A stretch of DNA of 57,006 nt, filler included, from Dugesia japonica (lineage: Eukaryota), in assembly GCA_001938525.1 (NCBI GenBank). It is 5 parts of 5 records of this genome, joined end to end, with 100 filler letters (N's around TTAATTAATTAA, not from the genome) between each part and the next. Parts side by side here need not be neighbours in the genome. Positions count along the whole stretch, not along the records: positions 1 to 9,482 come from MQRL01559242.1; 4 more parts are not named here. One strand, given 5' to 3'. A program made the translations under genes and the position numbers. Each line of letters starts with the position of its first letter. Position 1 is the first letter of the stretch. Positions 580-999 of this stretch are shown piece by piece. Below the pieces are notes generated by a model, which made no database searches, had not been told where the DNA came from, and saw only the letters and a program-made list of their open reading frames with translations.

Positions 580-802
580 CTTTGTTTGTTGAATTTCATA
601 CTGAACATTAACATTTCTTTTCTGAGTTTTAATAACTGTTCTTCTATTATATGGTATATTAAATTCTCTTAAATATTTCCTTTCTGTTTTCTCACATTAT
701 TTTGTTTTGAAAAAACCAAAACTGAATTTTCAATAAGAGTTTATAAAATTTTTCTTCAGTTGTTCCAGGTTGTATAGCTTTACTTGTATTATTAGAATCC
801 AT
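580..802 (-). pseudogene. Frameshifted homolog of orphan ORF 46986-47318 (early gene of the fold-back-headed element)
   Basis: Across two frameshifts it reads MDSNN...EEKFYK/TLIENSVLVFSKQNNV/KYLREFNIPYNRR...RNVNVQY. ORF 46986 reads NNFYKVL...MENSVTGFCKQNNV...KYLREFNIPYNRK...RDVNGQY. Confidence 0.8.
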
Positions 803-866
803 TTATCTTTACCAATAAAATTTTATTATATTTTTCAAAAAAACTAAAAACCAAGACGCCAACATA

Positions 867-999
867 AGTAGATGAGAAATGGCGGCTTCCAGATGGTTAT
901 TTTCCCATGCTTTTTACTATCCAAAATTTATAACATTAAATCGGCACTTGTTATGCAAAGTGGTACATCCTGATTGGAAGCCACAATTTCTCATCTACT
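867..999. repeat. 133-bp terminal fold-back with AGTAG...CTACT ends
   Basis: Left arm AGTAGATGAGAAATGGCGGCTTCCA (867-891); reverse complement of 975-999 is AGTAGATGAGAAATTGTGGCTTCCA (23/25 match). The right edge abuts a truncated piggyBac transposase. Confidence 0.85.

What the first reader, a model, noticed from the sequence alone, without database searches (positions are those of the whole stretch)
580..999. Second copy of the fold-back-headed family, confirmed by a shared orphan gene
Seen: a 133-bp fold-back whose outer end abuts a truncated piggyBac gene. About 65 bp inward starts a frameshifted gene sharing ENSV..F.KQNNV and KYLREFNIPYNR with ORF 46986. The ZnF ORF present in the 46-kb copy is absent and the next gene differs. 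Inference: terminus and orphan gene travel together as a family with variable cargo; the orphan may be a terminus-binding or regulatory protein.
Basis: seen in the sequence. Interest (0 to 1): 0.75.

Follow-up and report, generated by a model that had tools for sequence, protein, structure and literature searches.

The report
Maverick-end fold-back beside unsupported orphan ORF
The 133-bp hairpin is real and carries the end signature of Maverick/Polinton virus-like transposons on both edges, so it is probably a miniature or terminal Maverick piece in a pile of broken transposons; the neighbouring "orphan gene" has no support as a gene.

Summary
These are a fold-back (core 867-999; arms 862-891/975-1004, 27/30 complementary), a truncated piggyBac transposase abutting it, and a twice-frameshifted minus-strand reading path (802-547) holding both quoted motifs. 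The second copy lies outside my piece and could not be checked.

New here: the fold-back starts 5'-AGTAG and ends CTACT-3', close to the published Maverick end motif 5'-(AGT)2//(ACT)2-3'. A second fold-back in the window (5658-5782) has that motif exactly. So does a fold-back beside a related Maverick in an unrelated metagenome contig, which also shares the layout AGTAG-N5-AAATGG with 867-999. The window also holds a Maverick remnant (pPolB 1657-3055) that a piggyBac appears to have interrupted.

I read the fold-back as a non-coding Maverick end module, either a palindromic mini-Maverick or the tip of a longer one.

The "orphan" has no homologue in 1.84 billion representative proteins. Its ORF structure is no better than chance. 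Neither of the other two fold-backs has anything like it alongside.

Modest interest.

The parts
867..999 (.). Fold-back core (133 bp), 5'-AGTAGATGAGAAATGG ... CTCATCTACT-3'. A Maverick-type end motif sits on both edges. The inverted repeat extends to 862-1004 with one mismatch.
   Evidence: motif compared with PMC8097293
862..891 (+). Left arm of the inverted repeat
975..1004 (+). Right arm of the inverted repeat; it abuts the piggyBac remnant
547..802 (-). 'Orphan' reading path. ATG at 802; frame A 802-695 (about the first 23 codons used); frame B 740-672 (ENSVLVFSKQNNV at 731-693); frame C 696-550 (KYLREFNIPYNR at 678-643); stop 549-547. Not supported as a gene.
1057..1420 (-). piggyBac transposase remnant, roughly residues 240-376 of the T. 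ni protein, with in-frame stops and frameshifts. The C-terminal ~200 residues are missing.
1598..1608 (-). piggyBac 5' terminus: TTAA target (1605-1608) followed by CCCTAAT. Only ~190 bp separate it from the transposase remnant, so the copy is internally deleted.
1657..3055 (+). C-terminal two thirds of a Maverick/Polinton protein-primed DNA polymerase B, decayed. Homology starts within 50 bp of the piggyBac TTAA.
   Evidence: 40-57% identity to the PF03175 gene and its continuation P0001 in contig_27322
5658..5782 (.). Second fold-back (125 bp), 5'-AGTAGTATAT ... ATATACTACT-3', the exact (AGT)2//(ACT)2 motif. It is palindromic almost to its centre and lies between Maverick-homologous genes.
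6391..6848 (-). C-terminal half of a homologue of the 405-aa Maverick gene of contig_27322
69..668 (-). 200-codon stop-free frame in ~20% GC DNA. It encodes a signal-peptide-like start (Met at 458) and a Cys-rich body. It overlaps orphan frame C in another frame. No homologues were found.

Best explanation
The fold-back at 867-999 is a non-coding end module of a Maverick/Polinton element: two inverted copies of about 30 bp of a Maverick terminal repeat tip around an 83-bp spacer. Each copy begins with the Maverick end signature 5'-AGTAG. It is either a stand-alone palindromic mini-Maverick or the tip of a longer Maverick-type element. I cannot choose between these two and put them at roughly even odds.

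It sits in a nest of broken transposons. A piggyBac landed at a TTAA, apparently inside a Maverick DNA-polymerase gene. That piggyBac was later cut off in mid-gene exactly where the fold-back now lies.

Inferred, not shown: such modules depend in trans on Maverick proteins. These would be protein-primed replication starting on the AGT repeats by sliding back, and insertion by the integrase or by end-joining at a break.

The 'orphan gene' to the left is most likely not a functional gene. It may be decayed or non-coding flank, or sub-terminal sequence of the same element. Nothing here shows that it binds or regulates the terminus.
For: Shown:
- The fold-back is real.
- Its edges read AGTAGA...TCTACT, 5 of 6 on each side against the published 5'-(AGT)2//(ACT)2-3' Maverick end motif (PMC8097293).
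- The window's second fold-back, 5658-5782, has that motif exactly.
- The strongest inverted repeat in ENA contig ERZ25039515:contig_27322 is a 163-bp fold-back. It reads 5'-(AGT)3AAAATGG...CCATTTT(ACT)3-3' and lies about 100 bp from a block of Maverick genes: pPolB PF03175, rve integrase and an A32-like ATPase.
- AGTAG-N5-AAATGG occurs in the window and in that 32-kb contig only at fold-back edges. The chance expectation in the window is 0.15.
- The window holds a Maverick remnant whose pPolB is 40-57% identical to that contig's.
- None of the three fold-backs has coding capacity.

On the orphan:
- No Pfam or PHROG family.
- No word-search hit and none among 1.84 billion representative proteins.
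- None in the metagenome or viral collections.
- ORF structure not above chance.
- Absent beside the other two fold-backs.
Against: - None of the three fold-backs is flanked by the 6-bp target-site duplication expected of integrase-mediated Maverick insertion. The flanks are AACATA/AATGTA (4 of 6) at 867-999 and unrelated at the other two.
- The first fold-back matches the end motif only 5 of 6.
- The (AGT)2 motif is documented for vertebrate Mavericks, and this host is unknown.
- No full Maverick with a fold-back at both ends was seen. The other end of the contig_27322 Maverick is hidden behind an LTR retroelement that runs to the contig end.
- Only three fold-backs were seen, one of them found through a Maverick gene search, so closeness to Maverick genes is partly ascertainment.
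Confidence: 0.55

Rival explanations
1. The fold-back heads a longer mobile element running leftward, and the orphan ORF is its first gene. In Maverick terms, fold-back plus ORF would be a long terminal repeat (450 bp or more) present at both ends of an element. The two 'copies' would then have different inner neighbours, which the reader saw as 'variable cargo'.
For: No piggyBac sequence continues to the left of the fold-back, so more than 133 bp may have been inserted as a unit. No target duplication flanks the fold-back alone, as expected if it is only one end of something larger. Published Maverick terminal repeats reach 1,447 bp. The ORF has a TATA-like box upstream and an AATAAA downstream.
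Against: No second copy was available. The ORF is frameshifted twice, has no homologue anywhere, and is not above chance. The other two fold-backs have no such ORF beside them. The left flank has about 20% GC against 30-34% in the transposon genes and shows no similarity to any gene of the related Maverick.
Confidence: 0.22
2. The fold-back is an ordinary MITE of an unrelated cut-and-paste superfamily, for example PIF/Harbinger with a TAA duplication. The AGTAG ends would then be a coincidence.
For: If the ends are set at 868 and 998, TAA flanks both sides. The second fold-back then has AAA and TAA. A sub-threshold, hairpin-type Rfam match to MIR7504 scores 31 bits against a gathering score of 83.
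Against: A 3-bp match in DNA that is 73% A+T is weak. The contig_27322 fold-back has no such duplication. Three independent fold-backs begin with AGTAG, and two share AGTAG-N5-AAATGG, which is far beyond chance. No PIF/Harbinger gene was seen.
Confidence: 0.12
3. The fold-back is a local accident: an inverted duplication or filler made while repairing the break that truncated piggyBac. It would have no family behind it.
For: It lies exactly at the truncation point of the piggyBac gene, and there is no target duplication.
Against: Its end sequence recurs at two other fold-backs, one of them in a different genome.
Confidence: 0.05

Closest known systems
Maverick/Polinton virus-like transposons: terminal inverted repeats and end motifs (Kapitonov & Jurka 2006, as cited in Barreat & Katzourakis 2021, PMC8097293)
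   Same: The 5'-AGT-repeat ... ACT-repeat-3' ends. Arms within the published terminal-repeat range of 46-1,447 bp only for the contig fold-back (58 nt); the window's 30-nt and 27-nt arms are shorter. Maverick pPolB and other Maverick genes nearby in both genomes.
   Different: Here both end motifs lie only 125-163 bp apart, forming a hairpin with no genes. No 6-bp target duplication was found. No complete element with such ends was seen.
MITEs and other non-autonomous deletion derivatives of DNA transposons
   Same: Short, non-coding, with inverted ends like those of an autonomous element that could supply the proteins in trans.
   Different: No target duplication. Copy number is unknown. Two of the three are palindromic almost to the centre, unlike ends around a unique core.
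Composite-like DNA transposons such as KolobokP (Kojima & Bao 2022, PMC9587614)
   Same: If the fold-back is the tip of a larger element, each end would itself be a complete small element with its own inverted ends, which can also occur solo.
   Different: KolobokP ends are 450-660-bp direct repeats on a DDD/E transposon with TTAA-type biology. Here the ends would be Maverick-type hairpins. The composite structure itself is not shown.
Hairpin or snap-back deletion derivatives of protein-primed linear replicons: yeast killer-plasmid 'hairpin plasmids' and defective adenovirus genomes (from my own knowledge, not checked here)
   Same: A palindrome built from one genome end, as expected from template switching by a strand-displacing protein-primed polymerase. 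The contig_27322 fold-back pairs down to a 3-nt loop.
   Different: Those are extrachromosomal molecules. These are short and integrated in chromosomes. No experiment links them.
piggyBac (the neighbour, not the fold-back)
   Same: TTAA target followed by a CCC terminus, and DDE_Tnp_1_7 transposase pieces.
   Different: Internally deleted, and truncated after about residue 376-395. The other end is not in the window.

Membership tests
Maverick/Polinton (end module or miniature derivative) | Conserved end motif 5'-(AGT)2 // (ACT)2-3' or (AG)3//(CT)3 | tested here: met
   5658-5782 and contig_27322 2848-3010 match exactly. 867-999 matches 5 of 6 on each edge (motif from PMC8097293).
Maverick/Polinton (end module or miniature derivative) | Terminal inverted repeats | tested here: met
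   Arms of 30 nt (90%), 27 nt (93%) and 58 nt (91%).
Maverick/Polinton (end module or miniature derivative) | 6-bp target-site duplication | tested here: not met
   AACATA/AATGTA (4 of 6, uninformative) at 867-999. No shared 4-8-mer at the edges of the other two. The duplication could still flank a larger element that was not seen.
Maverick/Polinton (end module or miniature derivative) | Core genes (pPolB, integrase, ATPase, protease, capsid proteins) between the ends | tested here: not met
   Nothing coding lies inside the fold-backs, so membership can only be as a non-autonomous piece. pPolB and one other Maverick gene lie elsewhere in the window.
Maverick/Polinton (end module or miniature derivative) | Arm sequence identical to the terminal repeat tip of an autonomous Maverick in the same genome | not testable with these tools
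MITE (generic) | Short, non-coding, inverted ends, target duplication, many copies | tested here: inconclusive
   Short, non-coding and with inverted ends: yes. Duplication: no. Copy number: untestable.
PIF/Harbinger-type MITE | 3-bp TWA target duplication at all copies | tested here: not met
   TAA/TAA at 867-999 only, AAA/TAA at 5658-5782, and none at contig_27322.
Drosophila-type Foldback (FB) elements | Long inverted repeats built of tandem sub-repeats | tested here: not met
   No tandem repeats within 862-1004.
Parvovirus/densovirus-like terminal hairpin | Terminal hairpin next to an NS1/Rep gene | tested here: not met
   No Rep or any other family hit in the reading frames to the left.
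Protein-coding gene (the 'orphan') | Intact ORF longer than chance, homologues or a family, and evidence of constraint | tested here: not met
   Two frameshifts. The path is not above chance. No homologue or family. Constraint could not be tested without a second copy.
piggyBac (neighbouring remnant) | DDE_Tnp_1_7 transposase and a TTAA-flanked CCC... terminus | tested here: met

The most novel reading that the evidence does not exclude
The fold-backs are integrated defective mini-genomes of Mavericks. They would be palindromes made when the protein-primed polymerase snaps back on one genome end. They would then be copied as small linear hairpin replicons by Maverick proteins and captured at chromosome breaks by end-joining. 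This would explain three things: the missing target duplications, palindromy down to a 3-nt loop, and the position of 867-999 exactly at the break that truncated piggyBac. A variant of this reading: Mavericks of this lineage have composite ends, each a complete hairpin module, with a small ORF inside the long terminal repeat.
Probability: 0.12. Interest if true: 0.7.

Novelty: new member of a known kind. Interest (0 to 1): 0.35.

Why it matters
If the reading holds, hairpin-shaped mini-derivatives with the AGT-repeat end signature are a cheap marker for Maverick ends. Maverick boundaries are usually hard to find in AT-rich invertebrate or protist genomes. The shared AGTAG-N5-AAATGG layout in two genomes whose polymerases are only 40-57% identical points to a conserved site for the integrase or for replication initiation, and that can be tested in binding assays. 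The lack of target duplications hints at an unusual route into the chromosome. For the scan, the main result is a correction: this is not a new family defined by an orphan gene. It is a Maverick-related end piece in a nest of piggyBac, Maverick and Penelope-like remains.

Tried and rejected
Scans with the arm pattern found nothing in metagenome, viral or prokaryote-genome contigs. Exact look-ups of four window ORFs were negative.
- Orphan homologues. Nothing from the word search, the full HMMER search of 1.84 billion representatives, back-translated scans of metagenome and viral contigs, or tblastn against contig_27322. Pfam, PHROGs and PDB gave only sub-threshold noise: SNaCT11 E = 0.04, NIPP1 E = 0.47.
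- Fold of orphan piece 3. AlphaFold2 on the single sequence gave a short helix, a loop and a long helix (pLDDT 86). That is generic for a charged, A-rich-encoded peptide. Foldseek against PDB found no match at E <= 0.001, so an HTH call is not justified.
- Orphan as the continuation of piggyBac across a MITE insertion. Some stretches looked similar by eye, but there was no HMM or PDB support and the frame did not fit. Rejected.
- Fold-back as a known RNA or tRNA-derived SINE head. No tRNA and no Rfam family at gathering score.
- Replitron or Helitron-type ends. The published features (short direct terminal repeats, small hairpins, a Rep gene) do not fit.
- The tandem TTTACTAGATGARAMAT at 1624-1661 resembles the arm core, but it is a 16-bp duplication beside the start of pPolB homology and is within chance.
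- Paired ends for the contig_27322 Maverick. None found; an LTR retroelement spanning 15888-32241 hides the pPolB side.
- More Maverick relatives in viral contigs. None.
- Structure of the Cys-rich ORF. pLDDT 38, unusable.

Full report
**What is in the window.** The piece (1-9482) is AT-rich eukaryotic DNA: GC is about 19-21% at the left end and 30-34% over transposon genes. It has no tRNA and no Rfam family at gathering score. It is a nest of decayed mobile elements.

**The observation.** The strongest inverted repeat has arms at 862-891 and 975-1004. They are 30 nt long, 27/30 complementary, and 83 nt apart.
- Self-blastn gives E = 4e-5.
- The 133-nt core 867-999 folds as single-stranded DNA at -22.6 kcal/mol, z = -4.4, and none of 200 shuffles folds as well.

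A piggyBac transposase remnant lies immediately to the right, on the minus strand.
- Piece 1161-1057 aligns to T. ni piggyBac (PDB 6x67) residues 342-376, E = 1.7e-4.
- The same piece hits Pfam DDE_Tnp_1_7 positions 209-241 of 349, and piece 1420-1280 hits positions 125-157.
- The element's 5' terminus is at 1598-1608: TTAA followed by CCCTAAT.
- Only about 190 bp separate that terminus from the transposase remnant, so the copy is internally deleted.
- The copy also lacks everything after about residue 376-395, with the cut at the fold-back.

A minus-strand ATG at 802 lies to the left of the fold-back, 64 nt from the core. It opens a path through three frames to a stop at 549-547. ENSVLVFSKQNNV is at 731-693 and KYLREFNIPYNR at 678-643. 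The comparison with 'ORF 46986' and the 46-kb copy lies outside my piece and could not be checked. The window holds no second copy of 540-1060.

**Is the orphan a gene?** Nothing I could run says so.
- Pfam and PHROGs give only sub-threshold noise.
- The word search over 5.8 billion proteins found no candidate for the 49-residue third piece.
- The full HMMER scan of 1.84 billion representatives found nothing at E <= 0.001.
- Back-translated scans of metagenome and viral contigs found no relative.
- A 255-nt path with at most two frameshifts is available at 18-24% of all positions in this window and at 5-12% in shuffled sequence. The ORF structure therefore carries no weight.
- Frame C overlaps a much longer open frame (668-69, 200 codons). 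That frame encodes a signal-peptide-like start and a Cys-rich body. At about 8.5% stop frequency per codon, it is very unlikely to be open by chance.
- AlphaFold2 on the third piece alone gives a short helix, a loop and a long helix (pLDDT 86), which is typical of charged peptides. Foldseek against PDB finds nothing at E <= 0.001.

The caveat is that this genome seems absent from the protein collections. Four exact look-ups of window ORFs failed, and the Cys-rich ORF also finds nothing. 'No homologue' therefore does not exclude paralogues in the same genome.

**What the fold-back is.** The key lead came from the surroundings.

- It is 40-57% identical to two adjacent genes of ENA metagenome contig ERZ25039515:contig_27322. 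One of them carries PF03175.
- Window 6848-6391 (-) matches that contig's 405-aa gene.
- The contig also carries an rve integrase and an A32-like ATPase, so it is a Maverick/Polinton.

The strongest inverted repeat in the contig is a 163-bp fold-back.
- It lies at contig 2848-3010, with 58-nt arms that are 91% complementary.
- It folds at -63.7 kcal/mol, z = -18.6, and pairs down to a 3-nt loop.
- It sits about 100 bp beyond the last gene next to the Maverick gene block, which is an intron-containing gene.
- It reads 5'-AGTAGTAGTAAAATGG ... CCATTTTACTACTACT-3'.

The window's fold-back reads 5'-AGTAGATGAGAAATGG ... CTCATCTACT-3'. A second fold-back in the window, 5658-5782, reads 5'-AGTAGTATAT ... 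ATATACTACT-3'. That one has 27-nt arms at 93% complementarity, z = -7.0, and is palindromic nearly to its centre.

Barreat and Katzourakis (PMC8097293) report the most common Maverick end motif as 5'-(AGT)2//(ACT)2-3'. They give terminal repeats of 46-1,447 bp and 6-bp target duplications, citing Kapitonov and Jurka 2006 for the motif.
- Two of the three fold-backs carry that motif exactly on both edges. The finding's fold-back matches 5 of 6 on each.
- The layout AGTAG-N5-AAATGG occurs in the window and in the whole 32-kb contig only at fold-back edges. The expected count in the window is 0.15.

I conclude that these hairpins derive from Maverick ends.

**Mini-element or tip of a larger element?** This is unresolved.

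For a stand-alone mini-Maverick:
- Complete end motifs sit on both edges.
- 5658-5782 lies between two Maverick-homologous genes, where the related contig has no such hairpin.
- No orphan-like sequence lies beside the other two fold-backs.

For a terminal module of something longer:
- None of the three has a flanking duplication of 4-8 bp. The flanks at 867-999 are AACATA/AATGTA, 4 of 6, which fits a decayed duplication about as well as it fits chance.
- No piggyBac sequence resumes to the left of the fold-back, so more than the hairpin, or a deletion, lies at that junction.
- The contig's fold-back sits where a Maverick end would be expected.

That Maverick's other end cannot be inspected. 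An LTR retroelement with LTRs at 15888-16279 and 31847-32241 abuts the polymerase side and runs to the contig end.

The direction of 'inward' is also open. A single deletion from mid-piggyBac to the inner edge of the Maverick's own terminal hairpin would equally give the present arrangement. The Maverick body would then lie to the right and host DNA, including the orphan region, to the left.

**Mechanism (inferred).** The module has no genes, so it would depend on Maverick proteins supplied in trans. The trinucleotide repeat at the ends fits protein-primed initiation with sliding back, as in adenovirus and phi29-type replicons (established knowledge). Insertion would be by the integrase or, given the missing duplications, by end-joining at a break. 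The position of 867-999 exactly at the piggyBac truncation point fits capture at a break, but this is speculation.

**Rivals.**
I give it about 0.2.
- An unrelated MITE with a TAA duplication is unlikely, because the contig's fold-back lacks that duplication and the shared end sequence is far beyond chance.
- A one-off repair palindrome is excluded by the recurrence of the end sequence.
- The Rfam match to MIR7504 (31 bits against a gathering score of 83, on both strands) is a generic long-hairpin match.

**Verdict.** The family is most likely Maverick/Polinton and not a new one, and the orphan gene is unsupported. Interest is modest (0.35). The decisive test is an alignment of all genomic copies with their flanks.

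Noticed in passing
window 5658-5782: Second fold-back (27-nt arms, 93% complementary, palindromic almost to the centre) with the exact Maverick end motif AGTAGT...ACTACT. It lies between Maverick-homologous genes and has no flanking duplication.
   Followed up: partly
window 1657-3055 (+) and 6391-6848 (-): Decayed Maverick/Polinton remnant: the pPolB C-terminal part and a homologue of a 405-aa Maverick gene. The pPolB homology begins within 50 bp of the piggyBac TTAA at 1605-1608, as if piggyBac had inserted into the polymerase gene.
   Followed up: partly
window 69-668 (-): 200-codon stop-free frame in ~20% GC DNA, with a signal-peptide-like start (Met at 458) and a Cys-rich body. It has no homologue in the word search and no Pfam family, and the AlphaFold model was unusable (pLDDT 38). 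It is probably a real lineage-specific secreted-protein gene or first exon.
   Followed up: partly
window 5512-5522 (+): TTAACCCTCGT, a possible terminus of another piggyBac-like element about 140 bp from the second fold-back.
   Followed up: no
window 7590-8720 (+): By eye, decayed Penelope-like retroelement pieces: RT-like motifs and a GIY-YIG-like stretch near 8640-8720. Pfam gave no hit on the short pieces.
   Followed up: no
window 8676-8722 and 8773-8819: 47-bp direct repeat (98% identical) on both sides of an N gap. It looks like an assembly overlap left unresolved at the gap.
   Followed up: no
window 3313-3492: (AAT)n microsatellite on both sides of an N gap, just downstream of the polymerase remnant.
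   Followed up: no
window 1624-1661: 16-bp tandem duplication (TTTACTAGATGARAMAT, two copies) next to the piggyBac insertion site. Its resemblance to the fold-back arm core is within chance.
   Followed up: partly
window 7749-7807: 60-bp palindrome (80% self-complementary) with ends different from the AGTAG fold-backs.
   Followed up: no
L003:1556-9640 (contig_27322): 2,694-aa retroelement polyprotein with protease, RT, RNase H and integrase plus a PF24664 Monjiviricetes_fusion domain. It is bounded by ~400-bp direct repeats at contig 15888-16279 and 31847-32241: a giant LTR element carrying a viral fusion-protein domain.
   Followed up: no
L002:5532-6742 (contig_27322): The related Maverick carries a TBP-domain gene (PF00352) and a RING-finger gene (PF13920) next to its A32-like ATPase. 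This is unusual cargo for a Maverick.
   Followed up: no
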